Assembly: GCF_902713615.1 (NCBI RefSeq)
Contig: NC_052164.1
Coordinates: 19,394,114-19,458,113 of the forward strand
Reading direction: 5' to 3'
Length of the DNA: 64,000 nt
DNA from: Scyliorhinus canicula
Lineage: Eukaryota
Of the stretch, positions 2,951 to 41,998 are shown in pieces. Under the pieces are notes generated by a model. The model ran no database searches and was not told the origin of the DNA. It saw nothing but the letters and a program-made list of their open reading frames with translations. The first letter of the stretch is position 1; every line of letters begins with the position of its first letter. A program made the position numbers and the translations under genes.

Positions 2951-4864
2951 GGGGGCACTTCTCAGTTTCTTGCCATCATGGTTTTCTTACCCATCTCAGG
3001 CAATTAAGTGTATATGTGAAGCAATTGGGGTAGGGCAGATGGGCATCAAGTCATACACTGAATGCAACAATGGACACTGATGGACCAGATACTCTCCATT
3101 CCTCATTTTTGATCAGTTGAGGTAAACTGTCCAAAAAGGCCAGATGTTTTCCATATAAATTATTTTATCTGCAATAGTTCCCTCAAGGATGGCACTACAA
3201 TTGCCCATGAAGCATGCAATTCCCCTTCTTGAACAAGATTTGGATTCCTCTTTCACAGATGCAGATGTAATAGGGGTCGATTTGAGACACAATCTCAGCT
3301 CACCATTTGCTTAGCCATAAAATTGCTCTTAGCATCTAGGTTGAGTCCTGGTGGGAAAGGGAGAGAAACTTTAGCCAGGTTACTGTTACTCATTTACTCT
3401 TGCTTCAAGCATGGCCAACTATCCTTCCCCAGTTCAACTATTGCCAACACCTCAACAGTCAGCAACTCTGCTGCCTGTATTCCATCCCAAAACCATGTCT
3501 CCATCTCAACCACTCATCTGTGCTAACCTCCCAATTTAGAATTCTAATCCTTGATAACATCGCCCATCTACTCCTCTAGTCTCACAATCCTCAGAACTCA
3601 GCCAGACAACCACCCTACCCCCATCACTGGTGACCCCGCTTCATGGTTTAGCCCCCCAGAGATTTTGGAATTCCTCCTCCAACCATAACCCACCACTCTG
3701 GCTGAAGTCTTGGGTCTCTCCTCTTAGTTGCTCATTAAGTCATTTGGTGTGATCAGGTCCCTGAAGCATCTCAAAACATTAAGGCACTGTACAAATAGCT
3801 GCCACGAGCCTTATGAATGAAGCTACCCCTGGGGTACTGAGTACTATGAAGGAACCAGCACAATAAAGTCAAAGGGACGGGGCACCCTTTAAAAAAAAAT
3901 TATTGTTATTCTTATAGGAAACAATGGAAAGTGCCCAATGTCTTAACTGCATTGCTGCAGGGAGTGCCCAGACAACAGGGTAGATGCTAGTCACTTAGCA
4001 CCTCCCACTGCAGGGGGGGGGGGGGGGGGGGAAGAGAAAGACACTGACCAACTCTTAATCCCCAATTATTCAATCCCTGCAACCAGAGAATTAAACACTA
4101 CATTTAAAATTAAGAGCATCTTAACGTTTGGTGTTAACAGAAGAAGCCATGGTAAATTAATATTCAGTTAATATGGCAATAACACCGTGACAAATAGTCA
4201 CAGGAACCAAAAAAAGCAAACCAATAGTGAATGCTACTAAAGCCTTTTACTTCAGTATAAAGAATATTTTCTCCTCAAAATTATATCCCCCCTCCAAAAA
4301 AAAAGTCAAATTGCACATAGCGAACCCAAAGAGCGGCTTCTTCCCATTTTTATTCAACAAAAGGGAAATGATGGGAGTGGCATCATTTTCCAAATCCCCT
4401 TTAGACATATGGCGATCCATGTTACAAGTGTTCAAACGTCCATGTATATATAAAATAAAGAACTCTGGGAGTTCTTCAGTGGTGTAGTGTGTAACAGGGT
4501 GTGGAGACAACATGCCCGTTATTCTGCTGGCAATTTTTCCCTGAAGACAATCCAGAGGAATCTGGTGAGGGAAGCCCAGAGCCACAATCACACGGAGCAC
4601 AGCAGCGGGAGCTTCCACAACCGGGGCAGTGAGGGGAGCCTTTACCCGCTCAACCCCACAATAAAACGGGACAAAACACCCCAGACCCGCTCTTCGATTG
4701 GGTTCAGAGACCTTGATCATTACTCATGCCCAGCCCCAACACTGTTGTCTTCGGGAAGATTTGGGCGGTGGCTTTGATATCCCAGCCATGCAGACATTTT
4801 TTTTTGAGGGGGTGGGGGTGGGTAAAAGGAGAATCAACAGTTTGCAGGGAGCACAGCGCCTTAC

Positions 4865-5188
4865 CTTTCTGTCGGTCACATCGTCCCCAATCACTTCCAC
4901 GACCCCCGAGCACTCCATGCCCGGAATCAATGGGGGAGAAGACGGCAGTCTATCGTACAGACCCTGCCTGGCCATCAAATCGGCAAAATTCAAGCCGCAA
5001 GCCTTGACTCGGATGAGGATTTCACCTGATTTGGGAGTGGGGAGATCTTTCTTGACCTCCACCTTCAGTTTATCATAGCCCCCGAAGCCAGTCAGCACAA
5101 TGGCTTTGTAAGAGATCGCCGGCTCCGGCTCCTTGGCTTCTGGCTGAGGCTCCTGTTGTTGAGGCTCTTTGACTTCTTCCACAGACAT
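4865..5188 (-). CDS. VAT1: Synaptic vesicle membrane protein VAT-1 homolog (MDR/quinone-oxidoreductase fold), coding exon 1; later exons not found in window
   Basis: ATG at 5188 gives MSVEEV...AIVLTGFGGYDKLKV...IRVKACGLNFADLMARQGLYDRLP..PLIPGMECSGVV...DRK. It ends at a phase-0 donor AAG|GTAAGG at 4865/4864, 108 codons. The head-to-head neighbour RND2 matches the known VAT1-RND2 synteny. Confidence 0.93.
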
Positions 5189-6287
5189 TTTTGGATTTGA
5201 TTTCCCCCCCTCTCCTATAAAGGAGCGCAAAGTAAACAAGCACAAGGGACACGTTAATGCCGCTACCACAAGCTGATCTACAAAGAGAAATGCCCGGCCG
5301 AATTCGTCAGTTTCTTAAGCGGTTTCAAGGGGATTAGCACCGAAATCTTAGCGACTCCTCGTGAACCTTTCAGCAGCCAGTGAGCAAACTGCAAACATGG
5401 AGCTGGTACTTCAAGCTGCGGCTCCAACGTCACCGAATCACCAGCCAGTGGATTGATTGTATTTTTAAAAGCGTGTCACCCTCCCAGTTTTTTCTCCACT
5501 TACAAACATTACTAAAGTGCTGATTATCTGTCGATTAGCATGTTTAAATACGAACGACAAGCGGCTTGAAGCCTTTATTCCCTCCCCTGCCGTTGCTTTA
5601 GAAACACATTCAATGTCAAAATTCACTGCTGGGTGATTTTTATTTGATTAAGTGCCATGTTATTGTGCTAGTCTTTTCCCCTTCAGCCAATGGAAGGTTC
5701 TGGGGGAATTGTTTTTCATTGACATCCCAACACTATAGTCTCCCTTTTAACAGCAGGGGGGAAAAAAACACCACACACTCTTGAGAGCAATTTCCCAAGA
5801 TTTGCTCCCCCGCCCCCAAGTGGGGCAATTCACGGTTTAGAAGCAGAATTCGATTGGGGTGGTTGGGTCACTGATGTGCAGGTCTTCAGATAGTGGCCCA
5901 GTGGAGTTATAGCAAAACTGAGAATGTTCCCACTACCAATCTCCCCCCGTATAGGTTTTTAAAACATTTTTATGTACACCAGCGTTGCTTAAAACAAAAG
6001 GCATGGTGTGACCCATTGTACTGCTTCCTGTAGACAGTTGAGAGGATGTTTAGTTAGAATGTGCTTGTGCAATTTCTGTTTGTCATTCCCAGCCTTTGCT
6101 TTACCAGTGCATTACAGGCTTCCTGTGAGAATACTAAGTTCAAAATATCTCCTGGTGTGAATGCTAAAAGATAAAATTTGTGGTGTCATTATGGCGCAAC
6201 TATAAGACCGGTTTTGCGGATAACCAGGAATTATTGCAACATTAAGGGGTACATATTACTAACTAAGATAGATGACTTTCTTCCCCC

Positions 6288-14825: not shown

Positions 14826-15178
14826 CATAGAATTTACAGTGCAGAAGGAGGCCATTTGGCCCATCGAGTCTGCACCGGCTCTTGGAAAGAGCGCCCTACC
14901 CCCTATCCAAGGTCAACACCTCCACCCTATCCCCATTACCCAGTAACCCCACCCAACACTAAGGGCAATTTTGGATACTAAGGGCAATTTATCATGGCCA
15001 ATCCACCTAACCCGCTCATCTTTGGACTGTGGGAGGAAACCGGAGCACCCGGAGGAAACCCACGCACACACGGGGAGGATGTGCAGACTCCGCACAGACA
15101 GTGACCCAAGCCGGAATCGAACCTAGGACCCTGGAGCTGTGAAGCGATTGTGCTAGCCACAAGGCTACCGTGCTGCCC
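14826..15178 (-). mobile_element. HE1-type long V-SINE
   Basis: Near-identical to the copy at 39220-39563. Confidence 0.85.
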
Positions 15179-15410
15179 CTTTGCGATATGAACATTTTCC
15201 CTTGCTTATTTCCCCAAAGTTGAGAACAAGCATTACAGTAATCAGGAAAATAAATTAGATACAAAACGCTGGAACATGGAAATGAGGAAGATTGGTGGAA
15301 AGAAAACAATCAGTCGCGGCGTTTGGGAAACATTTTCCACAGTACATATTGCATTGCTCTTTCAAATGTTTCTTCAGATCTTCACCAATTCTCTCTTGAA
15401 TTTGGGGATA

Positions 15411-24538: not shown

Positions 24539-25335
24539 CTTGGATTGGATTGGATTTGTTTATTGTCACGTGTACCGAGGTACAGTGGAAAGTATTTTTC
24601 TGCGAGCAGCTCAACAGATCATTAAGTTCATGAAAAGCAAAGAAAATACATAATATGGCAACACAAGGTACACAATGTAACTACATAGACACAAGCATCG
24701 GGTGAAGCACACAGTGGTGTAGTATTAATCAGGTCAGCCCATAAGAAGGTCGTTAAGGAGAGTGGTAACAGCGAGGAAGAAGCTGTTTTTAAGTCTGTTC
24801 GTGTGTGTTCTCAGACTTTTGTATCTCCTGCCGGTTGGAAGAGTGAGTAAGCCGGGTGGGAGGAGTCTTTGATTATACTGCCCACTTTCCCCAGGCAGCG
24901 GAAGGTATAGCTGGAGTCAATGAATGGGAGGCAGGTTTGTGTGATGGACTGGGCTGTGTTCACAACTCTCTGAAGTTTCTTGCAGTCTTGGGCCGAGCAG
25001 TTGCCATACCAGCCTGTGATGCAGCCAGATAGGATGCTTTCTATGGTACATCTGTAAAAGTTGGTAAGAGTTAATGTGGACATGCCAAATTTCCTTAGTT
25101 TCCTGAGGATGTATAGGCGCTGTTGTGCTTTCGTGGTGGTAGCGTCAACATGGGTGGGCCAGGACAGATTTTTGGTGATGTGCACCCCTAGAAATTTGAA
25201 GCTGCTAACCATTCTCCACCTCGGCCCCGTTGATGCTGACAGTGGTGTGTACAGTACTTGGCTTTCTGAAGTCAATGACTAGCTCTTTAGTTTTGCTGGC
25301 ATTGAGGGATAGATTGTTGGCGCTGCACCATGGCG
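24539..25335 (-). mobile_element. 5'-truncated Rex1/Babar-like LINE 3' end
   Basis: ORF 24811-25275: FKFLGVHI..NLSW..H...KAQQRLYILRKLRKFG...FYRCTIESILSGCITGWYGN...KLQRVV; AATAAA plus (TCCAA)n tail at ~24539-24565. Confidence 0.8.
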
Positions 25336-28982: not shown

Positions 28983-29328
28983 GGGTGGCACGGTGGCACA
29001 GTGGTTAGCACTGCTGCCTCACAGCTCCAGGGTCTCAGGTTCGATTCCCGGCTTGGGTCACTGTCTGTGCGGAGTCTGCATGTTCTCCCCGTGTCTGCGT
29101 GGGTTTCCTCTGGGTGCTCCGGTTTCCTCCCACAGTCCAAAGATGTACAGTTTAGGTAGATTGGCCATGATAAATTGCTCCTTCATGTCCAAAAGGTTAG
29201 GTGGGGTTACTGGGTTATGGGGATAAGGTGGAGGTGTGGGCCTAGGTAGGGTGCTCTTTCCAAGGGCTGGTGCAGACTCGATAGGCCGAATGGCCTCCCT
29301 CTGCACTGTAGATTCTATGATTCTATGA
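28983..29328 (+). mobile_element. HE1-type long V-SINE
   Basis: Full head, V-domain and CR1-type (ATTCTATG)n tail. Confidence 0.85.
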
Positions 29329-30090: not shown

Positions 30091-30477
30091 GGGCCGGAAT
30101 GTTCAGGCCATTCGCTGGAGGCGGGCTTCTCTGGTCCCGTAAGCAGTGGAACTCCACCCGTGGGTTTCCAGGCGGCGTAGGCTGGTTTCATTGGAAATTC
30201 CCATTGGCAGTGGCGGGAAGAGAGAATTCCACCACCAGTAAATGGCGCGCCCCCTCCCGCTGCAGAGAAACGCGTGGCTGAGAGGCCGGAGAATCCCGCC
30301 CATTATTTTACACTCATCCTGATATTTACTTTCCATTGGTTTTATATTTGCCCATTATTTATTTATCTCTTGTATATTTTGTCTTCCTATACCCTTATGG
30401 TAAAGCCATTGAGATTTCACATGATTTTAATCATCTGAGGAGCTGTCTTTAGTGCCCTGTGAATTGCTGTAACCCAT

Positions 30478-30787
30478 TGTGGTGGGAAAAGGAAAACTCA
30501 GAAACAATCAGTCATGAATAAGAGCAACAGGAGAGAGAGGAAAGCGCGCCGAGGGCAGCAAGCTACAGTCTTTATTCATTCAAAAGATACAAGTAAATCT
30601 CCATTCCATATAAGGAGTTGTTTTTCTCCTAACTTTACTTTCTCGACCTTCAGACAGCTGGGATATCAGTTTTTCTCTCTCTCTCTCTCTCTAACCTTGC
30701 ACACACACGCACACAAAGGCCTGAAGCTTTAGGTAATCACACTATTAAGCAGTTATTCGATATTAAGTATTAAAATTGTCCATTGCT
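30478..30787 (-). repeat. ERV 3' LTR (lacks a 46-bp segment present in the 5' LTR)
   Basis: Direct repeat of 36395-36756, adjacent to the polypurine tract. Confidence 0.92.
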
Positions 30788-30788
30788 A

Positions 30789-30801
30789 TTCCCTCCTTTT
30801 T
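30789..30801 (-). promoter_or_regulatory. ERV polypurine tract
   Basis: AAAAAGGAGGGAA immediately upstream of the 3' LTR on the minus strand. Confidence 0.85.
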
Positions 30802-31046
30802 GTCATCCTAATGACAACATCTATCAAAATTTTAATCGCAGCCAGTCACCTAAGCAATATCTACATTCCCTTATTGTTAAACAAATGTTTGCTCAAAGAA
30901 CATATATCAGGTATCATCGTACTCCTGTAGATTTTTCAATAATACCATCATTAATCTTTGGTACATAAAATGGGAAACAGGTTGTCATTATAGCTATATG
31001 ACACAGCAGATTAGTCTATTGACAGTTCATTCTCGAATGGAGGTAT

Positions 31047-31415
31047 CTACTGGTTTGCCTCCTCTAAGTCAACTTGTTCCCTTGCTGCTGTTGGGTCAGA
31101 TAGTTTCAACATCCGGTAACTGCGGGACAGGTTTGCTATAGCTGCTTTCTGTAGGCATTGGCAGATGCATGGTCCAGTTTTGGGAAGTCCTTTCGCTGTG
31201 CTCGCCACCACCAGGTTCCAGTTGTATGGGCCACAGGGGTCTCGGCATAAGTACTTATCATCTCGCAAGTATTTAGAGTCATAGGGCCATGGGTCACACG
31301 TAAATGTGCCTGTCTCTCCTCTGGTTAATGTCACTGTAACCTCTCCAGCCCAATACGCTTTTCCCATTATCAGTTCCGGCATAAGCATCATGATAAGCGA
31401 CATTACCCCTTTCAT
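31047..31415 (-). CDS. env: Internally deleted env: signal-peptide-like leader, N-terminal half of an Ig V-set (CD300/pIgR-like) domain, env cytoplasmic-tail-like end; 122-aa open frame
   Basis: Lies between integrase and the PPT. MKGVMSLIMMLMPELIMG leader; GETGTFTC.PWPYDSKY....KYLCRDPC; ends GPCICQCLQK..., resembling the post-TM GPCI motif of gamma-type Env. Confidence 0.65.
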   Translation of the reverse strand: MKGVMSLIMMLMPELIMGKAYWAGEVTVTLTRGETGTFTCDPWPYDSKYLRDDKYLCRDPCGPYNWNLVVASTAKGLPKTGPCICQCLQKAAIANLSRSYRMLKLSDPTAAREQVDLEEANQ

Positions 31416-31453
31416 GTTGACTTGTCCGGTGTGAGCTGGGGCTCCGGCACCTG

Positions 31454-32480
31454 CTAACAATGACTAGCGTGAATCCACGTTGCTCTTTCTGCTACCTTTA
31501 TCGCTGTCTGCATCACAAGAAGCACCTGGAATGGTCCCAGCCACCGTCTAGCTCTCCAGCTCTTCCTCCTGAGGTCTTTCACCACTACCCAGTCGCCTGG
31601 CTGCAGGTCGTGCAACTTCCCCTCAGCCGGTCGTGGCAGGGCTTCCTTCACTTGAGCTTGCACCTGGGATAAAATTGCAGAGAGTTTTGTACAGTAACGT
31701 AACATTTCATCCTCACAATGGCTAGTCAGGGTCCTCGCGACGGGTTTTGGCCCAATTCCAGTGTTGGGTGGTCTGCCGAATAATATTTCAAATGGACTTA
31801 AATTGGCTCTACCTCTGACCCTAGTCCTCATGTACATTAGTACTACGGGCAGGGCTTTCGTCCACGGTATTCCCATTTCATCGCAACACTTTGCTAGCTT
31901 ATTTTTCAGAGTGGCATTTTCCCTTTCTACCGCTCCTCCACTCGCTTGATGGTATGCACAGTGTTGCCTTAGATCAATACCTAGGTATTCTCCTACCTGT
32001 TTCAGAGCCTGGTTTACAAATGGCGTGCCATTATCACTGCTGATTTTCTCTGGGATGCCCCATCGTGGAATGATTTCAGTTAACAGGGCCTTGGTTACTG
32101 CACTAGCATCTTGTTTGGCTGTAGGGAACACCTCTACCCACTTAGAGAACATGTCAACCATTACTAGGCAGTATTTCTTCCCTTCACTTGGGGTTAGCTC
32201 AATAAAGTCCATTTGAATATGCTCGAAGGGTCTCAGAGGTTCTGGGTGCGCCCCTGGGCTTATCTTAATTCCTCTCCCCACATTATTGGTAGCACAAATA
32301 ACACATCGCTCACAAAATTTCTGGGAGTAACTAGTAAAGCCTCTGGTGTACCAATGTGCAGCGATACTCTTGAACATCCCTCCTTTTGACACATGGTCCT
32401 TGCCGTGTGTCAACTTAGCATAATGAGGAAATAGCGCTCTCGGTAGACATGGCTTATCATTGGGGCCGTACCATCCCCCT
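31454..32480 (-). pseudogene. pol: ERV integrase (frameshifted at a T-run near 32481; premature stop at 31454)
   Basis: HHCC remnant (THG..H...C..C), QMDFIEL, VDMFSKWVE, ISSDNGTPF, SGGAVERENATLK (DDE), LQPGDWV, GPFQVLL, WIHASH. Confidence 0.93.
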
Positions 32481-33185
32481 TTTTTTTACCTTACCCCCTG
32501 CCTTTGACCATTCTTTCTTTTCTTCCCGTGAGGCTTGTGTTTGCAGGTCTTGTATGTCCGCTGTTGGGATAGGAACTGTTAGCATTGGCATGTTTACATT
32601 ATCACTGATAGGTTTTCGTGCTGCTGCTTTCGCTGCCGCATCCGCCCTTGCATTTCCCTGTGAGACTGGATCGGTTTTCCCTGTATGTGCGTCACACTTA
32701 CAGACTGCAATACACTCAGGTAAGAGGACTGCGTCCAAGAGATCAGAAATCAGCCCATGGTGCGTGATTGGTTTGCCTGTTGATGTTAAGAATCCCCTAT
32801 GTTTCCACAAGGTTCCGAAATCATGAGTCACCCCAAAGGCATACTGTCTGTGTAGATAGTAACGGACTTGCCTTCTGCAAGTTTACATGCTTCTGTAAGG
32901 GCTATCAATTCCGCAGCTTGTGCGGAGAGGTGTCTAGGAAGTGGCTCTGCTTTTAGTATGTTGTGTGATGTGACTATGGCATACCCCACACAGTTCTGGC
33001 CCGCTTCTCGATCTCTGAACGCAGACCCATCCACAAACAGTTCCATGTCGGGGTTTTGTAGGGGGGTATCCTGCAAGTCAGGTCGCGGACTACAAACTTC
33101 ATTAGTTAGAGCAACACAATCATGTGGTTCCCCATCACCTGCGGTGGGATGAAGAGTGGCGGGGTTAAGTATGGTACACCTTTTC
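32457..33185 (-). pseudogene. pol: ERV tether/RNase H (frameshifted at ~32830)
   Basis: LNPATL.P...PHDC, LFVDGS, SAQAAELIAL, IYTDS, RGFLTS.GKPI, HT....SQGNARADAAAK. Confidence 0.93.
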
Positions 33186-33820
33186 AACCACATCATGTTT
33201 TCCCTTTGCCCAAAGTTTCCCCGGAACTGTCTGCAGTCGCGGGTCATCGGCAGTAATTTGTACAAAACTCCAGGTTGTTCCCCTATGGCTCTGGTCTGAG
33301 GCGGGGACTATCTCCACCACTCTCTCTGCCCGAGATAGCCAGTTAAGATTCTTTTTATAAGCTCGCATACTCGTACTGAACCACACAGTTGTGTCTGAAA
33401 GCAGTGTCCAATCATTGACTTTGAGATTTTTAAGGACCCACGGTCCCAAATCTTTCCATTGTCTATTGCGCCCTTTCGCTAATGATACATGGGGGTGTGA
33501 CCCTTCTATTGTAAAGGGGTGTGGTACTCCTGATCTCAGACGTATTCTAGACAGGTCTAGAACCTATGCTCATCCCAATATAACTCCCATATCAGCAGCA
33601 CCTCAGACTTTTGCAACTTCCCGAGCCATTCATTCTCGTATTGATTATCTGGTCCCCCCAAGTGAATGTGTGCGGTGCAGTGCAGATTCTCCTTGGACAT
33701 AAAGTCAGTGTTAATAGGGTTAACGCGTTTGCGTGCTTCTCCCATGAGTGCTTGGTTTACTGAACTCACTGCCGCTGGAGTCAATCTCCATTCATAAATA
33801 TACATCAGGGGTCTGGCGTC
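33186..33820 (-). pseudogene. Putative 2H-phosphoesterase domain followed by the first residues of RT (RT core deleted)
   Basis: LHCTA (His at 33680-33682) and PHVSL (His at 33489-33491) motifs, one frameshift between them at ~33545-33562; then DPRLQTVPGKLWAKGKHDV, the typical RT N-terminus, cut off at ~33186. Confidence 0.65.
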
Positions 33821-33987
33821 AAATTTAACTCCTTGGATTCGTGCATCACACTCTCTATAGTCTGTGTAAAGATTTCAAGAACGTTAGTACAAGAGGTTAG
33901 CTTAAGCGGTTCTTCATTGCAAAGTATCAAGGTTTTGGACTCACCCTCTCCTTCAGGCATACCTCCATCGTCCTCTCCTCCCCTTTG

Positions 33988-35966
33988 TCAATTACCATTG
34001 TCATCATTGTCTCTTGGCCCTTCTTGTCTCTTTGTTGGGCAGTCTCTTGCCCAGTGATCCTTGCTTCCGCACGTGAAACACCCATCCGTCTTACCGCGTC
34101 CTCGACCTCCCCTGCCTCTTCCTCTTGTCTGTCCTCTACCTCTTCCTCGTTGCTGACCTTCTGCAACCTGTGTCACCATCTGCATCATAGTTAGCTGTGC
34201 TTGGTGACTCTGATCCTCCCTCCTTTTGTTCCGCTTCACCTTTTCTTGTGTCAGTAGCTTTTCAGCGTGCATGGCGTGTTGTTCGATTAAGTTGAGTTTC
34301 CCTGTGTCCCATGTAATACATGTATTTTTCACCTTCTTAGCGATGTCCTCACTTAATCCATTCATAAAACTGTTCCGCAGATGTGCCTCATACGGAGTCA
34401 CTTCAGCTGTATTTATGTCAGCTGGTGGTGTAAGTCCACTATGAGCGTTATGGACTTCTGTGAGCCGGGTCAGGTACTGGGACACAGTTTCACCGTCACG
34501 CTGCTTACACGTGGCAATTTTTGTCATGTCCATTCTTACCGGAAAGGCAGTTTGACAGGCGTCCACCAGACCTGTAACAAAGGCGTTATAAGGCACATTA
34601 TCTGCATGGTCTGGTTGAACTTGGCAAGCTCGTACATTATCACCTGGCCAATTGTATCGGATCTTGGGGATGTCTGCGCCCAATTTCCTCCCCAATAATC
34701 GCCGCATCTCATGAGACGTGGGGCGAAACTCGAGGCAGAACCTGCGTACCTCGCCTGCAAATTTCTGGCCTCCCGCTTCTCTGGGATCTGGGAGTTGTTC
34801 ATAGGCACATTCAATGTCTTTCATTGTCCACGGTCTGTGGACAAGTATCGGTTGTCCTTCCGGGCCCGCCACTTCTATCATTGGAGCATTGAGGACATTG
34901 CCGAGGAATTTACTGTCTCCTTCCCTTTCTTCGTCGCCTTTGTGATAATTAAACGGTTCTGGTGCATCTGGAAGGGCAGATTTAGGTCTGCACGACGCCT
35001 TACTCCGGGTATGGTGAGCTACTCGGGAGTCAGATGTAGTCATGGTACTGATGTCTGGGTAAAGGGGGTGACGGTCAGCTCCTGACGGTAGAGTTCCCAT
35101 GGACGTCTCAGGCATTCCCCGAGGGGGTTCACTATATGGTGGAGGGCTCGGTCGCGACTCTTGGCCTGGGTTCATGGGGGCCACTTGTGGAGGAGCCGTT
35201 GGCCTGGGAGGCAGCCATCCAGGTCGGGATCATCCGGAATGGGGTGACCTGAAATAGACTTAACACACTGAAGAGATTTGGTTTTATTTGCAGTTTCTTT
35301 GGGTTTCGCCTGTGATCGTCTATTTCTTATTTCTGCCTCTGTTTTCCACATACCGTAAGCCGCCCAATTTATTGTTTCTTTTTTCCTTTTGCTTTTCTTT
35401 CCACTTTCTTTTGCCCTCTGTTCTAACTGGGTTTTTAATAATTCCAATTGTCTTAAACTAAAACTTCCTCCTTCAGGAAAACCACACTCCTTCACCCACA
35501 TTTTAACTTGACTCACCGAGTCTTGTCCATAATTAGTAACCATGTATCGTATATTAGGGCTATTTAAACTTGCAGCATTTAGAACATAGAACATAGAACA
35601 GTACAGCACAGAACAGGCCCTTCGGCCCTCAATGTTGTGCCGAGCCATGATCACCCCACTCAAACCCACGTATACACCCTATACCCGTAACCCAACAACC
35701 CCCCCCCTTAACCTTACTTTTATTAGGACACTACGGGCAATTTAGCATGGCCAATCCACCTAACCCTCACATCTTTAGACTGTGGGAGGAAACCGGAGCA
35801 CCCGGAGGAAACCCACGCACACAGGGGGAGGACGTGCAGACTCCACACAGACAGTGACCCAGCTGGGAATCGAACCTGGGACCCTGGAGCTGTGAAGCAT
35901 TTATGCTAACCACCATGCTACCCTGCTGCCCCAATTTGTTTGTTTTTTCCCATTGCTATTACCCAT
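33988..35966 (-). pseudogene. gag: ERV gag (SINE insertion at 35581-35931; frameshift at ~35180)
   Basis: ATG at 35966 gives MGNSNGKK (myristoylation-type start); PPPY and LYPDI late-domain-like motifs; major homology region CKQRDGETVSQYLTRL; RG repeats; a single CCHC knuckle CFTCGSKDHWARDC; TGA at 33988-33990. Confidence 0.92.
35581..35931 (-). mobile_element. Young V-SINE subfamily inserted into ERV gag
   Basis: Near-identical reverse complement of 41658-41998; tail GAGGGCCGAAGGGCCTGTTCTGTGCTGTACTGTTCTATGTTCTATGTTCT. Confidence 0.9.
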
Positions 35967-36371
35967 GACCGGTCTCTTACTTGTGAGCCAGACTCACAGC
36001 GACCTTATCCTTTGTGACTTGATTTTCCTCCGGAGGCTCCCGCACGTAAGCGCGTCCGCTTAGGTGGCTTGGTTTTCCTAAACCAGCAAACCAATACCTA
36101 TCGTTTAGGTATTTTTACAGGTCCAACCTGTTTGATAGATCCAAGTCTAAATCCACCCGTCACTGTGAGACTGTTCACCACTGTCTATAATTAATAATAG
36201 AGCAATTCCTTACCACAGATTTCAGTCCGGATCCCGGTGTTGAGGTGACACAGTAATTCCTGGTCCTCTCACGCTGATGGCCATTGAAGCGTTTGAGATG
36301 AGGTGAAAAGCCCTCAAGGCGTCAGCGCTAACGCCTCCCCGGAATCTCCCAGTGTCTACCTCAAGCATGGG

Positions 36372-36389
36372 ATCCCATCCTCGTCGCCA
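36372..36389 (-). promoter_or_regulatory. ERV primer-binding site, tRNA-Ser(GCU)
   Basis: TGGCGACGAGGATGGGAT is complementary to the vertebrate tRNA-Ser(GCU) 3' end ...ATCCCATCCTCGTCG-CCA. Confidence 0.85.
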
Positions 36390-36394
36390 AGAAC

Positions 36395-36756
36395 TGTGGT
36401 GGGAAAAGGAAAACTCAGAAACAATCAGTCATGAACAAGAACAAGTTTAGTTTATTTCTTAGCTCTGCAGAGGACACCCTCCTCTCTCTACAGGCGAGAG
36501 AGGAAAGCGCGCCGAGCGCAGCAAGCTACAGTCTTTATTCATTCAAAAGATACAAGTAAATCTCCATTCCATATAAGGAGTTGTTTTTCTCCTAACTTTA
36601 CTTTCTCGACCTTCAGACAGCTGGGATATCAGTTTTTCTCTCTCCCTCTCTAACCTTGCACACACACACACACACACACACACAAAGGCCTGAAGCTTTA
36701 GGTAATCACACTATTAAGCAGTTATTCAATATTAAGTATTAAAATTGTCCATTACA
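36395..36756 (-). repeat. ERV 5' LTR (362 bp)
   Basis: TGTAATGG...CCCACCACA on the minus strand; internal (TG)n and GA-rich tracts; two AATAAA hexamers; GT-rich U5-like end. Confidence 0.94.
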
Positions 36757-37654
36757 CCATATTGTTATTATACTGCTGCGGATGGTATAAAGACGGATTG
36801 ACGCCACTTCCTGATTGCCATCACAATTATTGCACCACAGTTAAAGGAAGGCTTTGTATATCAGGCAGCACGGTAGCACAGTGGTTAGTACTGTGGCTTC
36901 ACACTGCCAGGGTCCCAGGTTCGATTCCCTGCTGGGTCACTGTCTGTGCGGAGTCTCCCTGCGGAGTTTGCACATTCCTCTCACAGTCCAAAGACGTGCA
37001 GGTTAGGTGGACTGGCCATGTTAAATTGACCTTAGTGTCCAAAAATGCTAGGTATGACTCCAAGTAGTGAAGAGTTCCACCCGGATTTCCATTGACTCCA
37101 GTCTTGCTAGGGCTCCCTGTTCCCACACTCAGTCAATTGCTGCCTTGATGTCAAGGTCACTCACTCTCATCTCATATCACATATAATCTATCAACGCCAG
37201 CAACTCAATTGTTAAAATAGATATAACAGACTCCTCAGCAACTTTGGAAAATGCTGGAACTCCATCCATGTCTGATAACCCCTCTGTGGTCTTTGGCTCC
37301 TTTCTGACTTCGAATGTAACTAAAACAAATCCACACAATTACTGTTGTGCCAATCCACAATCCTTTTACCCATTATTCTGCTGGTCAATCTGAGAGTAGA
37401 TTTTGTAGCGGGCAACATTAATCTTTATATCTAATTCTGTTAGTTTAATAATTACTTTTCCTGAATCTGATAAAGTATTTGTTGTTGTTTAATCTGTTTC
37501 CAAATATCACCATTAACCCATGTTGACTTAAATTTACCGTCACCATTCTTTTAATCTGAGGGAGATAAGTGAATTCCTTGCCCAAATGTATAATTCCATT
37601 TGTCTCCAGTACCATAGTTGTTGTTATCTAATAGTCAATATCTTTCTAATATTG

Positions 37655-39219: not shown

Positions 39220-39563
39220 TCATAGAATTTACAGTGTAGAAGGAGGCCACTCAGCCCATCGTGTCTGCACTGGCTCTTGGAAAGAGCACCCTACCCAAGG
39301 TCAACACCTCCACCCTATCCCCATAACCCAGTAACCCCACCCAACACTAACGGCAATTTTGGACACTAAGGGCAATTTATCATGGCCAATCCACCTAACC
39401 TGCACATCTTTGGACTGTGGGAGGAAACCGGAGCACCTGGAGGAAACCCACGCACACACGGGGAGGATGTGCAGACTCTGCACAGACAGTGACCCAAGCC
39501 GGAATCAAACCTCGGACCCTGGAGCTGTGAAGCAATTGTGCTATCCACAATGCTACCGTGCTG
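39220..39563 (-). mobile_element. HE1-type long V-SINE
   Basis: Near-identical to 14826-15178. Confidence 0.85.
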
Positions 39564-40631
39564 ACCACCAAAAAATGATTAGGCCAATTTACCTGGTCCA
39601 TAAACTTGGGAACTAAGTGCCCTGCAGGCAGAAGGCCCCCAAAAATGGGAGGCATCATGATTGCAGCGTCTAAACCCCTCTACTAAAGCCTCGGGATTCC
39701 AGGTGTTTTCCAATGGGGATGGAGGTGTGGATTGTTCCTGGTCTGCTGCTTCTATTTCCATCCACTAAAGCTTTCTGGATGCCCAAGAATACTGAAGGTC
39801 AAGGAGAACCGGCACTGTAATCAACGTTGAGCTCCAATGACTGGAAGGCTAGCGGAGGTCCCCGGGCAGGTGAATAATTACTAGATAAAGCGTTTCTAAT
39901 TGTTCCCTGCCTTCAACAAAAGTTTGGATTTCAACCTGGATTATTTGATCATTGATCTGCAATTGGCAGCCAGGAAATCCTGAGCACCAGGGCCAGAGAA
40001 GGGCCTGCAGGTCTCAAAGTCCCACAGCTGCTCCTGGACCTCTTGCCTCCACCACCAGTGCGAGGCCATGCCAGAGCGGGACCACTAGCTCAAATGCAGA
40101 AGCTCGAAGGGCTGAAGAGGTGCACTGCTCCTGTTTAGTGTCTGGGCTGGGGACATTCAGAAGATCGGTACTATAGGGTGTGATTTAAGGGGGGGGGGGG
40201 GGGAAATCAGAGTCCACTTTTGGGTACATTTAGTGGGTTGTTTCTCAGTGGCTGCAGTGCTGAGAAACACCCAGCTATTCAACAGCACTTTGCCGTTTTG
40301 TTGGGCCTCAGTGAGGAACTTCCTGTCGAGGCCGCGATGACATCATTTCCTGTACTGATGAGCTCAACACGCTAGTGCAGGAAGAGTACTCGTGGATCGG
40401 GCCCTATTTTTAAAGTCAGGCCCGATCTTTCCACCCCCCTCACCCCCCCAGCTACCCCACCGCAGCCTCTGGACCACCACACTGCACCCAAACTACCTCA
40501 TCTGGGCTCTTCAAGCCCCCCCGCCCCATCTCATAAGGGCACCCCTGGCATGGGCACCCAGGCACCTTGGCACTGCCAGGCTGGCAGGGGCACTGCCATA
40601 GTGCCACCCAGGCACCCTGGTAATTCCAGGA

Positions 40632-41657: not shown

Positions 41658-41998
41658 GGGCAGCAGGGTAGCATGGTGGTTAGCATAAATGCTTCACAGC
41701 TCCAGGGTCCCAGGTTCGATTCCCGGCTGGGTCACTGTCTGTGTGGAGTCTGCACGTCCTCCCCCTGTGTGCGTGGGTTTCCTCCGGGTGCTCCGGTTTC
41801 CTCCCACAGTCCAAAGATGTGTGGGTTAGGTGGATTGGCCATGCTAAATTGCCCGTAGTGTCCTAATAAAAAGTAAGGTTAAGGGGGGGGTTGTTGGGTT
41901 ACGGGTATAGGGTGGATACGTGGGTTTGAGTAGGGTGATCATGGCTCGGCACAACATTGAGGGCCGAAGGGCCTGTTCTGTGCTGTACTGTTCTATGT
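41658..41998 (+). mobile_element. Young V-SINE subfamily with CR1 3' tail
   Basis: Matches 35581-35931; tail matches the CR1 3' end at ~62205-62270. Confidence 0.88.

What the first reader, a model, noticed from the sequence alone, without database searches (positions are those of the whole stretch)
30478..36756. Shark-type ERV carrying two non-canonical modules (2H phosphoesterase and Ig-domain Env): candidate retroviral immune-evasion kit
Seen: a bounded provirus (LTRs, CCAT TSD, PBS-Ser, PPT) in the order gag - [protease missing] - 2H-like domain - RT start/[deleted] - RNase H - IN - Ig-like env remnant. Established: simple gamma/epsilon retroviruses normally encode neither module. Inference: the parental virus combined an enzyme that may degrade antiviral nucleotide signals with a captured immune-receptor fold on its surface protein. 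This copy is defective, so the system must be studied in fuller relatives. I cannot establish novelty without a search.
Basis: partly seen in the sequence, partly recalled or inferred. Interest (0 to 1): 0.8.

Follow-up and report, generated by a model that had tools for sequence, protein, structure and literature searches.

The report
Defective shark provirus with 2H and Ig modules
A broken endogenous retrovirus in a shark genome belongs to a fish retrovirus lineage whose complete members carry an extra 2H-type phosphoesterase domain between protease and reverse transcriptase and an immunoglobulin V-type domain at the tip of the envelope protein; the first extra is already on record for fish retroviruses, the second appears not to be described.

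Summary
Window 30478-36756 is an LTR-bounded provirus on the minus strand, with a 4-bp target-site duplication, a primer-binding site and a polypurine tract. Gag, RNase H and integrase are recognisable. Protease, the RT polymerase and connection regions, and most of env are deleted.

Both modules are real lineage features. Three far more complete natural relatives (L001, L002, L003) have gag, PR, extra domain, RT, RNase H, IN and an Env with a Pfam V-set domain followed by a gamma-type TM.

An AlphaFold model of the extra domain (pLDDT 83) matches only 2H phosphoesterases among its top 50 PDB hits. CNPase is the closest. Two H-x-T/S-x tetrads are conserved.

The Env N-terminal domain scores above Pfam's V-set cut-off. 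Its model is closest to pIgR, CD300 and TREM V domains.

Between the window and L001, dN/dS is 0.13-0.15 for both modules, similar to gag.

CNPase/2H domains in fish retroviruses were reported in 2002 and 2009. Gamma-type receptor-binding domains already have a V-type Ig-like core, so the V-set most likely binds the receptor. An "immune-evasion kit" is untested.

My rating is a new variant of a known kind, of moderate interest.

The parts
30478..36756 (-). Whole defective provirus (5' LTR - PBS - leader - gag - 2H-like domain - RNase H - IN - env remnant - PPT - 3' LTR)
   Evidence: LTR pair, TSD, Pfam domains, coverage against L001.
30474..30477 (.). Target-site duplication, copy next to the 3' LTR (CCAT on + strand)
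   Evidence: Read directly.
36757..36760 (.). Target-site duplication, copy next to the 5' LTR (CCAT on + strand)
   Evidence: Read directly. The LTR start is supported by the same LTR start in L001.
36395..36756 (-). 5' LTR (362 nt, TG...CA)
30478..30787 (-). 3' LTR (310 nt). It lacks a 46-nt stretch present in the 5' LTR and differs in a microsatellite.
36372..36389 (-). Primer-binding site (18 nt, starts TGG, 5 nt after the 5' LTR). The tRNA isotype was not tested.
   Evidence: unique in the window; same layout in L001.
30789..30801 (-). Polypurine tract next to the 3' LTR
   Evidence: a comparable tract lies in L001 before its 3' LTR.
33988..35582 (-). gag (broken gene, one part). It corresponds to L001 Gag residues 10-526 and has one zinc knuckle.
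   Evidence: Pfam zf-CCHC E 1.5e-6; 74% identity over the main piece; outer bounds; break counts.
33306..33838 (-). 2H-phosphoesterase-like domain (broken, one part). It corresponds to L001 PR-ORF residues 161-341. Both H-x-T/S-x tetrads are present.
   Evidence: 80% identity to L001; tetrads seen; 46 relatives; fold of relative P0049; outer bounds.
31418..33187 (-). Remainder of pol: RNase H and integrase (broken gene, one part). The RT polymerase and connection regions are absent.
   Evidence: Pfam RNase_H, rve and MLVIN_C; coverage; outer bounds.
31014..31460 (-). env remnant (broken gene, one part): signal peptide, the first part of the V-set domain and the cytoplasmic tail
   Evidence: Two matches to L001 Env, to residues 10-88 and 568-603; coverage.

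Best explanation
Shown: the window holds a dead, non-autonomous endogenous provirus in a shark genome.
- It belongs to a class I (gamma/epsilon-like) fish retrovirus lineage.
- Complete members read gag, in-frame stop, PR, 2H-like domain, RT, RNase H, IN, then a gamma-type env.
- In that env a single Ig V-set domain occupies the position of the receptor-binding domain.
- This copy has lost protease, the RT polymerase and connection regions, and most of env. It carries further frameshifts and stops, so it does nothing as a virus.

Inferred for the lineage:
- The 2H-like domain is made as part of Gag-Pol. It would therefore be packed into particles, as the dUTPase of some retroviruses is.
- It most likely works as a metal-independent phosphodiesterase on 2',3'-cyclic phosphate or 2'-5'-linked nucleotides. 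These could be RNA ends or nucleotide messengers of innate immunity.
- The V-set domain, of the pIgR/CD300/TREM type, most likely serves as the receptor-binding head of SU.
For: Provirus anatomy.

Architecture in relatives:
- L001: gag 526 aa, PR plus extra domain 344 aa, pol 1042 aa, env 615 aa.
- L002: gag 518 aa, pol 1428 aa in one ORF, env 611 aa.
- L003: pol ORF 1451 aa, env 623 aa.
- All three carry the extra domain and a V-set plus TLV_coat Env.
- gag and the following ORF are in the same frame in L001 and L002.

2H-like domain:
- 46 relatives place the domain between RVP and RVT_1.
- The AF2 model has pLDDT 83.
- All top-50 PDB Foldseek hits are 2H enzymes: CNPase, RICH, TT0787, LigT and CPDase. 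E is about 4e-3, TM 0.5-0.6, probability 1.0.
- Viral structure hits include phage Acb1, bat coronavirus ORF4b and fish retrovirus proteins.
- His is present in 35 of 44 rows at tetrad 1 and 24 of 29 rows at tetrad 2. Both tetrads are intact in the window.
- dN/dS is 0.15 for both pieces.

V-set domain:
- Pfam 35.4 bits against a cut-off of 26.
- PDB sequence hits to pIgR, MXRA8 and CD300, sharing the extra Cys-pair signature.
- The AF2 model has pLDDT 83-95 over residues 25-140.
- Foldseek hits to pIgR D2, CD300a/c/lf, TREM2 and TIM have target TM 0.70-0.79.
- A flexible linker follows, then CXXC, a furin-type site, the immunosuppressive region and CX6CC.
- dN/dS is 0.13.
Against: - Sequence profiles do not place the extra domain in any curated 2H family. 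One of 44 members gives a weak tRNA_lig_CPD hit (E 0.028), and the family profile finds no PDB sequence.
- The Foldseek E-values are modest.
- I could not inspect the model coordinates, so I did not check that the two tetrads face each other in a cleft.
- Thr/Ser at tetrad 2 is kept in only 16 of 28 rows.
- No substrate is known.
- dS between the window and L001 is near saturation (0.7-2.0), so the dN/dS values are rough.
- For Env, no ligand or receptor is known.
- A search with the V-set alone found no host relative.
Confidence: 0.7

Rival explanations
1. The two modules form an immune-evasion kit. The 2H enzyme destroys antiviral nucleotide signals (2-5A, cyclic dinucleotides). The Ig domain on Env is a captured immune receptor that acts as a decoy or modulator.
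For: - Viral 2H enzymes with this role exist and appear among the structural neighbours: phage Acb1 and bat coronavirus ORF4b. The 2',5'-phosphodiesterases of RNA viruses are cited in PMC9503650.
- The nearest Ig structures are immune receptors: pIgR, CD300 and TREM2.
- The two modules co-occur in three relatives.
- An OAS gene exists in the elephant shark (PMC6307210).
Against: - The closest fold is CNPase/RICH, not the 2-5A-specific AKAP7/NS2/VP3 group. None of that group is in the top 50.
- The V-set occupies the receptor-binding position of SU and is the only domain upstream of the CXXC region.
- The 2H domain also occurs in relatives for which no V-set Env was found, such as L004, which has no env. 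Weaker V-set signatures extend to more distant Envs. The two modules are therefore not shown to be a linked unit.
- From memory and unverified here: teleosts may lack the OAS/RNase L pathway.
Confidence: 0.25
2. The Env V-set was not captured recently. It is the little-changed ancestral form of the gamma-type receptor-binding domain, whose core in mammalian viruses is a decorated V-type Ig-like sandwich.
For: - The RBD of the human endogenous Env EnvP(b)1 (6w5y) is among the Foldseek hits of the Env model (E 4e-7, target TM 0.5).
- PMC7683403 describes that core as similar to a V-type Ig fold and conserved among gammaretroviruses.
- The V-like pattern is shared by distant fish Envs of 35-40% identity. 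V-set hits occur in 9 of 19 Env relatives.
Against: - Host V domains match better (target TM 0.70-0.79) than EnvP(b)1 (about 0.5).
- The pIgR/CD300-type extra Cys pair points to a specific host subfamily.
- No phylogeny was made.
Confidence: 0.2
3. The extra Pol domain keeps a 2H-like fold but is catalytically inert. It would serve as a spacer or as a protein- or RNA-binding module in Gag-Pol.
For: - No curated 2H profile recognises it.
- The Thr/Ser of tetrad 2 is often replaced (16 of 28 rows kept).
- It is compact, at about 150-170 residues.
Against: - Both histidines are kept in about 80% of rows, even though many rows are decayed copies.
- Both tetrads are intact in the open relatives and in the window.
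- The domain evolves under purifying selection like gag.
Confidence: 0.15

Closest known systems
Teleost epsilon-like endogenous retroviruses with a CNPase-type extra ORF or domain (Basta et al. 2009, as summarised in PMC4977317)
   Same: These are fish class I retroviruses that carry a 2',3'-cyclic-nucleotide-phosphodiesterase-like (2H) sequence. My structural search also puts CNPase first. Teleost relatives with the same PR - domain - RT order were found in Takifugu, Siniperca and Siganus.
   Different: The host here is a shark. I could not read the 2009 paper, so I cannot say whether its element is the same lineage or has the domain at the same position. No mention of an Ig-type Env was found in any paper I could read.
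Walleye dermal sarcoma virus / walleye epidermal hyperplasia virus (2H domain noted by Mazumder et al. 2002, cited in PMC9503650)
   Same: These are fish retroviruses with a 2H-fold domain. Their BFVD models match the model made here (E 7e-4 and 1e-4).
   Different: There the matching chains are labelled 'Envelope polyprotein', not Pol. Those viruses lack a gamma-type Env (PMC9967133). Sequence identity is 12-13%.
Viral 2H phosphodiesterases that destroy nucleotide immune signals (coronavirus NS2/ORF4b, rotavirus VP3 C-terminal domain, phage Acb1)
   Same: They share the same superfamily fold and are virus-encoded. Acb1 and bat coronavirus HKU5 ORF4b appear among the structural neighbours.
   Different: The matches are weak (E 0.009-0.3). 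None of these proteins is embedded in a retroviral Pol. No substrate is known for the fish and shark domain.
Retroviral dUTPase embedded in Pol (own knowledge: betaretroviruses and non-primate lentiviruses)
   Same: It is an accessory enzyme domain inserted in the pro-pol polyprotein, and so is delivered with the particle.
   Different: The fold and the chemistry are unrelated. This is an analogy of layout only and was not tested here.
Gamma-type Env receptor-binding domains (Friend MLV, FeLV-B, human EnvP(b)1)
   Same: They are N-terminal SU domains with a V-type Ig-like sandwich core, followed by a linker and a CXXC-bearing SU C-domain, with a gamma-type TM carrying CX6CC.
   Different: The fish and shark domain is a bare V-set of about 110 residues. 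It passes Pfam's V-set cut-off and has pIgR/CD300-type cysteines. It resembles host V domains more than EnvP(b)1.
Host pIgR / CD300 / TREM / TIM family V-set domains
   Same: These are the best sequence and structure matches. They share the Cys pair after the C strand and the D-x-G-x-Y-x-C motif.
   Different: Identity is only about 20-23%. The domain is fused to a retroviral SU. No close host homologue was found.

Membership tests
LTR-bounded class I (gamma/epsilon-like) endogenous retrovirus | Two LTRs in direct orientation ending TG...CA, flanked by a short target-site duplication | tested here: met
   LTRs at 30478-30787 and 36395-36756; CCAT on both flanks.
LTR-bounded class I (gamma/epsilon-like) endogenous retrovirus | PBS after the 5' LTR and PPT before the 3' LTR | tested here: met
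   A TGG-initiated 18-mer lies 5 nt after the LTR. A purine tract lies before the 3' LTR. The layout is shared with L001. The tRNA isotype was not tested.
LTR-bounded class I (gamma/epsilon-like) endogenous retrovirus | Gag with zinc knuckle; pol with RNase H, integrase core and the MLV-type integrase C-terminal domain; gag and pol in one frame separated by a stop | tested here: met
   Pfam zf-CCHC, RNase_H, rve and MLVIN_C. Same-frame gag and pol in L001 and L002.
LTR-bounded class I (gamma/epsilon-like) endogenous retrovirus | Placement in an RT or IN phylogeny with named gamma- and epsilonretroviruses | not tested
   No named reference retrovirus sequences could be fetched under the rules. 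The RT is deleted in the window.
2H phosphoesterase superfamily | Two H-x-T/S-x tetrads | tested here: met
   Both are present in the window's pieces and in L001, L002 and L003. Shares across relatives: His 35/44 and 24/29; Thr/Ser 41/44 and 16/28.
2H phosphoesterase superfamily | Two-lobed alpha/beta fold with the tetrads on central strands | tested here: met
   AF2 model with pLDDT 83; the tetrads fall in strands 76-82 and 135-141. All top-50 PDB Foldseek hits are 2H enzymes. Cleft geometry was not inspected because no coordinates were available.
2H phosphoesterase superfamily | Recognition by a curated sequence profile of a 2H family | tested here: not met
   Pfam gives nothing for the window piece. 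One of 44 relatives gives a sub-threshold tRNA_lig_CPD hit. The profile finds nothing among PDB sequences.
2H phosphoesterase superfamily | Phosphodiesterase activity on cyclic or 2'-5' phosphodiesters | not testable with these tools
   No biochemical data are available.
Ig V-set domain (pIgR/CD300/TREM type) | Pfam V-set above the gathering score | tested here: met
   Met in relatives: L001 Env at 35.4 bits against 26, P0103-P0105 and P0111, and 9 of 19 Envs at E <= 1. The window's own remnant keeps only about 59% of signal peptide plus V-set and gives no Pfam hit.
Ig V-set domain (pIgR/CD300/TREM type) | B-strand and F-strand cysteines with D-x-G-x-Y-x-C, plus the extra Cys pair of the pIgR/CD300 group | tested here: met
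   Seen in L001 Env and in its alignments to pIgR domains. The usual C-strand Trp is replaced. The F-strand motif is deleted in the window copy.
Ig V-set domain (pIgR/CD300/TREM type) | V-type beta-sandwich fold | tested here: met
   The AF2 Env model has pLDDT 83-95 over residues 25-140. Foldseek hits to pIgR D2, CD300a/c/lf, TREM2 and TIM-1/4 have target TM 0.70-0.79.
Gamma-type retroviral Env | CXXC in SU, furin-type SU/TM site, immunosuppressive region and CX6CC in TM, membrane anchor | tested here: met
   All are visible in L001 Env. Pfam TLV_coat E 5e-15. In the window these parts are deleted.

The most novel reading that the evidence does not exclude
The bare V-set at the head of these fish and shark Envs may be close to the original state of the gamma-type receptor-binding domain. 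On this reading, the receptor-binding heads of MLV-like viruses and syncytin-type Envs descend from a captured host pIgR/CD300-type immunoglobulin domain. In the same lineage, the Pol-embedded 2H enzyme would be a particle-delivered phosphodiesterase aimed at host nucleotide messengers or cyclic-phosphate RNA ends.
Probability: 0.15. Interest if true: 0.8.

Novelty: new variant of a known kind. Interest (0 to 1): 0.5.

Why it matters
The copy in the window is a fossil and does nothing by itself. It does flag a retrovirus lineage shared by sharks and bony fishes with two informative features.

The first is a Pol-embedded 2H domain. It has been noted in fish retroviruses for about two decades, and I found no functional study of it in the papers I could search. 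Here it gains a confident fold model, a defined position (PR - 2H - RT) and evidence of purifying selection.

The second is an Env whose receptor-binding position is held by a sequence-recognisable immunoglobulin V-set domain. This gives a concrete, testable link between the immunoglobulin superfamily and the V-type Ig-like core of gamma-type envelope heads. It bears on how retroviruses acquire and exchange receptor-binding modules.

Tried and rejected
Searches that found nothing useful:
- Pfam on the window's own 2H-like piece and env remnant gave no hit.
- phmmer of the 2H-like piece against PDB sequences gave only a chance hit.
- The profile of 44 relatives against PDB sequences gave only a chance hit.
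- Pfam on all 44 relatives gave one sub-threshold 2H-family hit.
- A homologue search with the V-set alone gave no hit, so the host source of the domain stays open.
- The window's exact PBS 18-mer was not found in the relatives' loci. L001 has a near-identical PBS at the same place.
- ARAGORN on the window and loci found no tRNA gene that could identify the PBS isotype.
- Rfam on the element gave only two sub-threshold chance matches and no read-through element.

Papers:
- Basta 2009 and Mazumder 2002 are not held.
- Several searches for an Ig-type retroviral Env in fish found nothing relevant.

Readings considered and rejected:
- That the CCAT duplication is an artefact of the LTR's own start. 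The LTR start is fixed by L001's 3' LTR, which leaves CCAT outside the LTR on both sides.
- That the H-x-S tetrad in the stretch right after the gag stop is the first 2H motif. The relatives show that stretch is upstream of protease, and both real tetrads lie downstream.

Slips, declared:
- In my private reasoning I began to recall a cellular tRNA sequence from memory.
- The script printed the position of a repeat inside the element before I recognised it as a nested insertion.
- While reading translations I located one frameshift relative to the protein text in my reasoning.
- None of these is repeated in this report, and nothing was deleted.

Full report
**1. What is in the window**

The longest ORFs between 30.5 and 36.8 kb lie on the minus strand, so the element is read on that strand.

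Two direct repeats bound it, at 30478-30787 and 36395-36756.
- They are 96-98% identical outside a GT/GA microsatellite and one 46-nt indel.
- That corresponds to roughly 2-3% substitutions.
- Both read TG...CA.
- The LTR start is fixed by comparison with the 3' LTR of relative L001.
- With that start, CCAT lies directly outside the element on both sides, at 30474-30477 and 36757-36760.

Five nucleotides inside the 5' LTR sits an 18-mer beginning TGG (36372-36389). It is unique in the window and has the same layout in L001. A purine tract abuts the 3' LTR.

Pfam finds a Gag zinc knuckle, RNase H in two pieces, an integrase core and the MLV-type integrase C-terminal domain.

**2. State of the copy**

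I measured the copy against the natural relative L001.

| Region | Share of L001 region represented |
|---|---|
| Gag | 98% |
| Protease | 0% |
| Extra domain after protease | 96% |
| RT polymerase and connection | 0% |
| RNase H and integrase | 100% |
| Signal peptide plus V-set | 59% |
| Rest of SU | 0% |
| TM | 5% |
| Cytoplasmic tail | 100% |

Break counts, relative to L001:
- gag: one frameshift and three in-frame stops.
- Protease: deleted together with the stretch before it. This is one deletion of about 160 codons.
- 2H-like domain: one frameshift.
- pol: one deletion of about 450 codons, which removes RT, plus two frame changes and two stops in the RNase H and integrase part.
- env: one in-frame deletion of about 480 codons and one premature stop.

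One SINE-type repeat of about 340 nt is nested in the 5' leader, outside the genes.

**3. Relatives**

Gag finds relatives in sharks: Scyliorhinus canicula at 92% over a partial match, Mustelus asterias at 74%, and Chiloscyllium. It also finds relatives at about 60% identity in catfishes.

Three loci carry far more complete natural relatives.
- L001 is filed as a JGI metagenome contig but is clearly vertebrate DNA. It has gag (526 aa), an ORF with protease plus about 200 further residues (344 aa), pol (1042 aa) and env (615 aa).
- L002 is an NCBI assembly contig. It has gag (518 aa), pol as one ORF (1428 aa) and env (611 aa).
- L003 is from the teleost Siganus canaliculatus. It has a pol ORF of 1451 aa and env of 623 aa.

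gag and the next ORF share a frame in L001 and L002. This fits stop-codon read-through.

I only read and compared these sequences.

**4. The 2H-like module**

The window piece 33560-33874(-) is 80% identical to residues 161-252 of L001's protease ORF, just after the Pfam protease match at 48-144.

An exhaustive HMMER search found 46 relatives.
- Those with other domains show protease before the piece, RT after it, or both.
- Named hosts include Takifugu and Siniperca.
- L002 and L003 carry the domain at pol residues of about 131-307.

No curated profile recognises the domain.

An AlphaFold model of a 180-residue natural relative, P0049, with 44 aligned relatives reached pLDDT 83.
- All 50 best PDB matches are 2H phosphoesterases. 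They are the mouse CNPase catalytic domain, goldfish RICH, Thermus TT0787, E. coli LigT and the Deinococcus CPDase.
- The scores are E about 4e-3, TM 0.5-0.6 and probability 1.0.

Among predicted viral structures:
- The best match is an unnamed 1072-residue chain, Q2VF30_1 (E 4e-7, 23% identity).
- Next come the 'Envelope polyprotein' chains of walleye epidermal hyperplasia virus 1 and walleye dermal sarcoma virus.
- After those come phage Acb1 proteins, giant-virus proteins and bat coronavirus ORF4b.

Two H-x-T/S-x tetrads fall on predicted strands.
- His is present in 35 of 44 and 24 of 29 aligned rows.
- Thr/Ser is present in 41 of 44 and 16 of 28 rows.
- Both tetrads are present in the window's own pieces.

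Between the window and L001, the two pieces of the domain each give dN/dS 0.15. Gag gives 0.14-0.19, RNase H 0.06-0.14 and integrase 0.03. dS is high, so these values are rough.

The fold assignment is well supported. Activity and substrate are inference.

**5. The Ig module**

The window's env remnant matches L001 Env residues 10-88 (61% identity) and 568-603. It therefore keeps the signal peptide, the first part of the N-terminal domain and the tail.

Sequence evidence from L001 Env:
- The N-terminal domain (residues 25-135) passes Pfam V-set, at 35.4 bits against a cut-off of 26.
- It matches PDB sequences of pIgR, MXRA8 and CD300, with E from 5e-7 to 1e-4. It shares their extra cysteine pair after the C strand.

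The rest of that Env is gamma-type:
- a flexible acidic/proline linker;
- a CXXC motif;
- a polybasic cleavage site;
- the immunosuppressive region with CX6CC;
- a membrane anchor;
- a Pfam TLV_coat match.

The single V-set thus occupies the place of the receptor-binding domain.

Distribution and structure:
- V-set plus TLV_coat Envs recur in L002, L003 and further contigs.
- The pattern extends, more weakly, to Envs of 35-40% identity. Nine of 19 relatives give a V-set hit.
- An AlphaFold model of the natural Env P0102 is confident in this domain, with pLDDT 83-95.
- Foldseek puts pIgR domain 2, CD300a/c/lf, TREM2 and TIM-1/4 first, with target TM 0.70-0.79.
- The receptor-binding domain of the human endogenous Env EnvP(b)1 is also among the hits, at target TM of about 0.5.
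- dN/dS of the retained part is 0.13.

**6. Comparison with the literature**
- A review states that some teleost epsilon-like ERVs carry extra ORFs for a CNPase or a macro domain, citing Basta et al. 2009 (PMC4977317).
- Another states that 2H domains occur in certain retroviruses such as walleye dermal sarcoma virus, citing Mazumder et al. 2002 (PMC9503650).
- Neither primary paper could be read.
- The 2H module is therefore a known kind of retroviral extra. What is added here is a shark host, the PR - 2H - RT position, a fold model and selection estimates.
- For Env, the structure paper on EnvP(b)1 describes the core of gamma-type receptor-binding domains as similar to a V-type Ig fold (PMC7683403).
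- I found no paper describing a sequence-recognisable V-set in a retroviral Env. The library is incomplete.

**7. How it most likely works**

The window copy does nothing as a virus.

For the lineage, the 2H-like domain is translated within Gag-Pol. By inference it is packed into particles and present at entry and reverse transcription.
- Its closest fold, CNPase, suggests hydrolysis of 2',3'-cyclic phosphates.
- Action on 2'-5'-linked messengers, as in coronavirus and rotavirus enzymes or phage Acb1, is possible but not indicated by the ranking.
- An OAS gene exists in the elephant shark (PMC6307210).
- My recollection that teleosts lack the OAS/RNase L pathway is unverified.

The V-set most likely binds the receptor. 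Its kinship with pIgR, CD300, TREM and TIM domains hints at the kind of ligand but proves nothing.

**8. Verdict**

- The modules are real, conserved and co-occurring.
- 'Non-canonical' is overstated for both modules.
- The immune-evasion role is untested.
- Receptor binding is the simpler reading for the Ig domain.

My rating is a new variant of a known kind, with interest 0.5.

Noticed in passing
Window, 5' leader of the element; other copies include 41658-41998, 39311-39566, 14923-15179 and 28988-29256: A SINE-type repeat family has at least 15 copies in the window. One copy of about 340 nt is nested in the provirus leader. It is 98% identical to the copy at 41658-41998, so the family was active after the provirus integrated.
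   Followed up: partly
BFVD hits of model mcb9bdfca1854: The 'Envelope polyprotein' chains of walleye dermal sarcoma virus and walleye epidermal hyperplasia virus 1 match the 2H-like model (E 7e-4 and 1e-4, TM 0.52). In those viruses the 2H fold is filed under a different gene product than in this lineage. This may mean separate acquisitions.
   Followed up: no
Searches (Gag relatives; Env relatives): One lineage spans sharks (Scyliorhinus, Mustelus, Chiloscyllium), catfishes (Tachysurus, about 60% Gag identity) and percomorph teleosts (Siganus, Xyrichtys). This pattern suggests transfer between cartilaginous and bony fishes.
   Followed up: partly
L001:1-14965: L001 is filed as a JGI metagenome contig (sample 3300030237) but carries vertebrate-type DNA, including a tRNA-Met gene at 342-415. 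The contig ends inside the 3' LTR. The 5' LTR matches the 3' LTR only over its last part; the upstream U3-like stretch differs.
   Followed up: partly
Foldseek hits of the Env model: The receptor-binding domain of the human endogenous Env EnvP(b)1 (6w5y) is among the matches of the fish/shark Env model. This fits the published remark that gamma-type RBD cores resemble a V-type Ig fold (PMC7683403).
   Followed up: partly
L004:6001-11148 (Takifugu rubripes): A 1715-aa ORF carries the 2H-like domain and RT, RNase H and IN. It gives no Pfam protease hit, and no env-sized ORF follows it.
   Followed up: no
Window 4727-5269 (-) and 24814-25275 (-): ORFs with Pfam ADH_N (E 3e-11) and ALKBH8_N (E 2e-10) lie here. 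They are probably an exon or pseudogene fragment and a repeat-derived fragment.
   Followed up: no
Window 36395-36756 compared with 30478-30787: The two LTRs differ by a 46-nt indel that overlaps an AATAAA-containing stretch in the 5' copy. They also differ in the lengths of their GT/GA microsatellites.
   Followed up: no
Window, whole: There are 315 N in the window.
   Followed up: no
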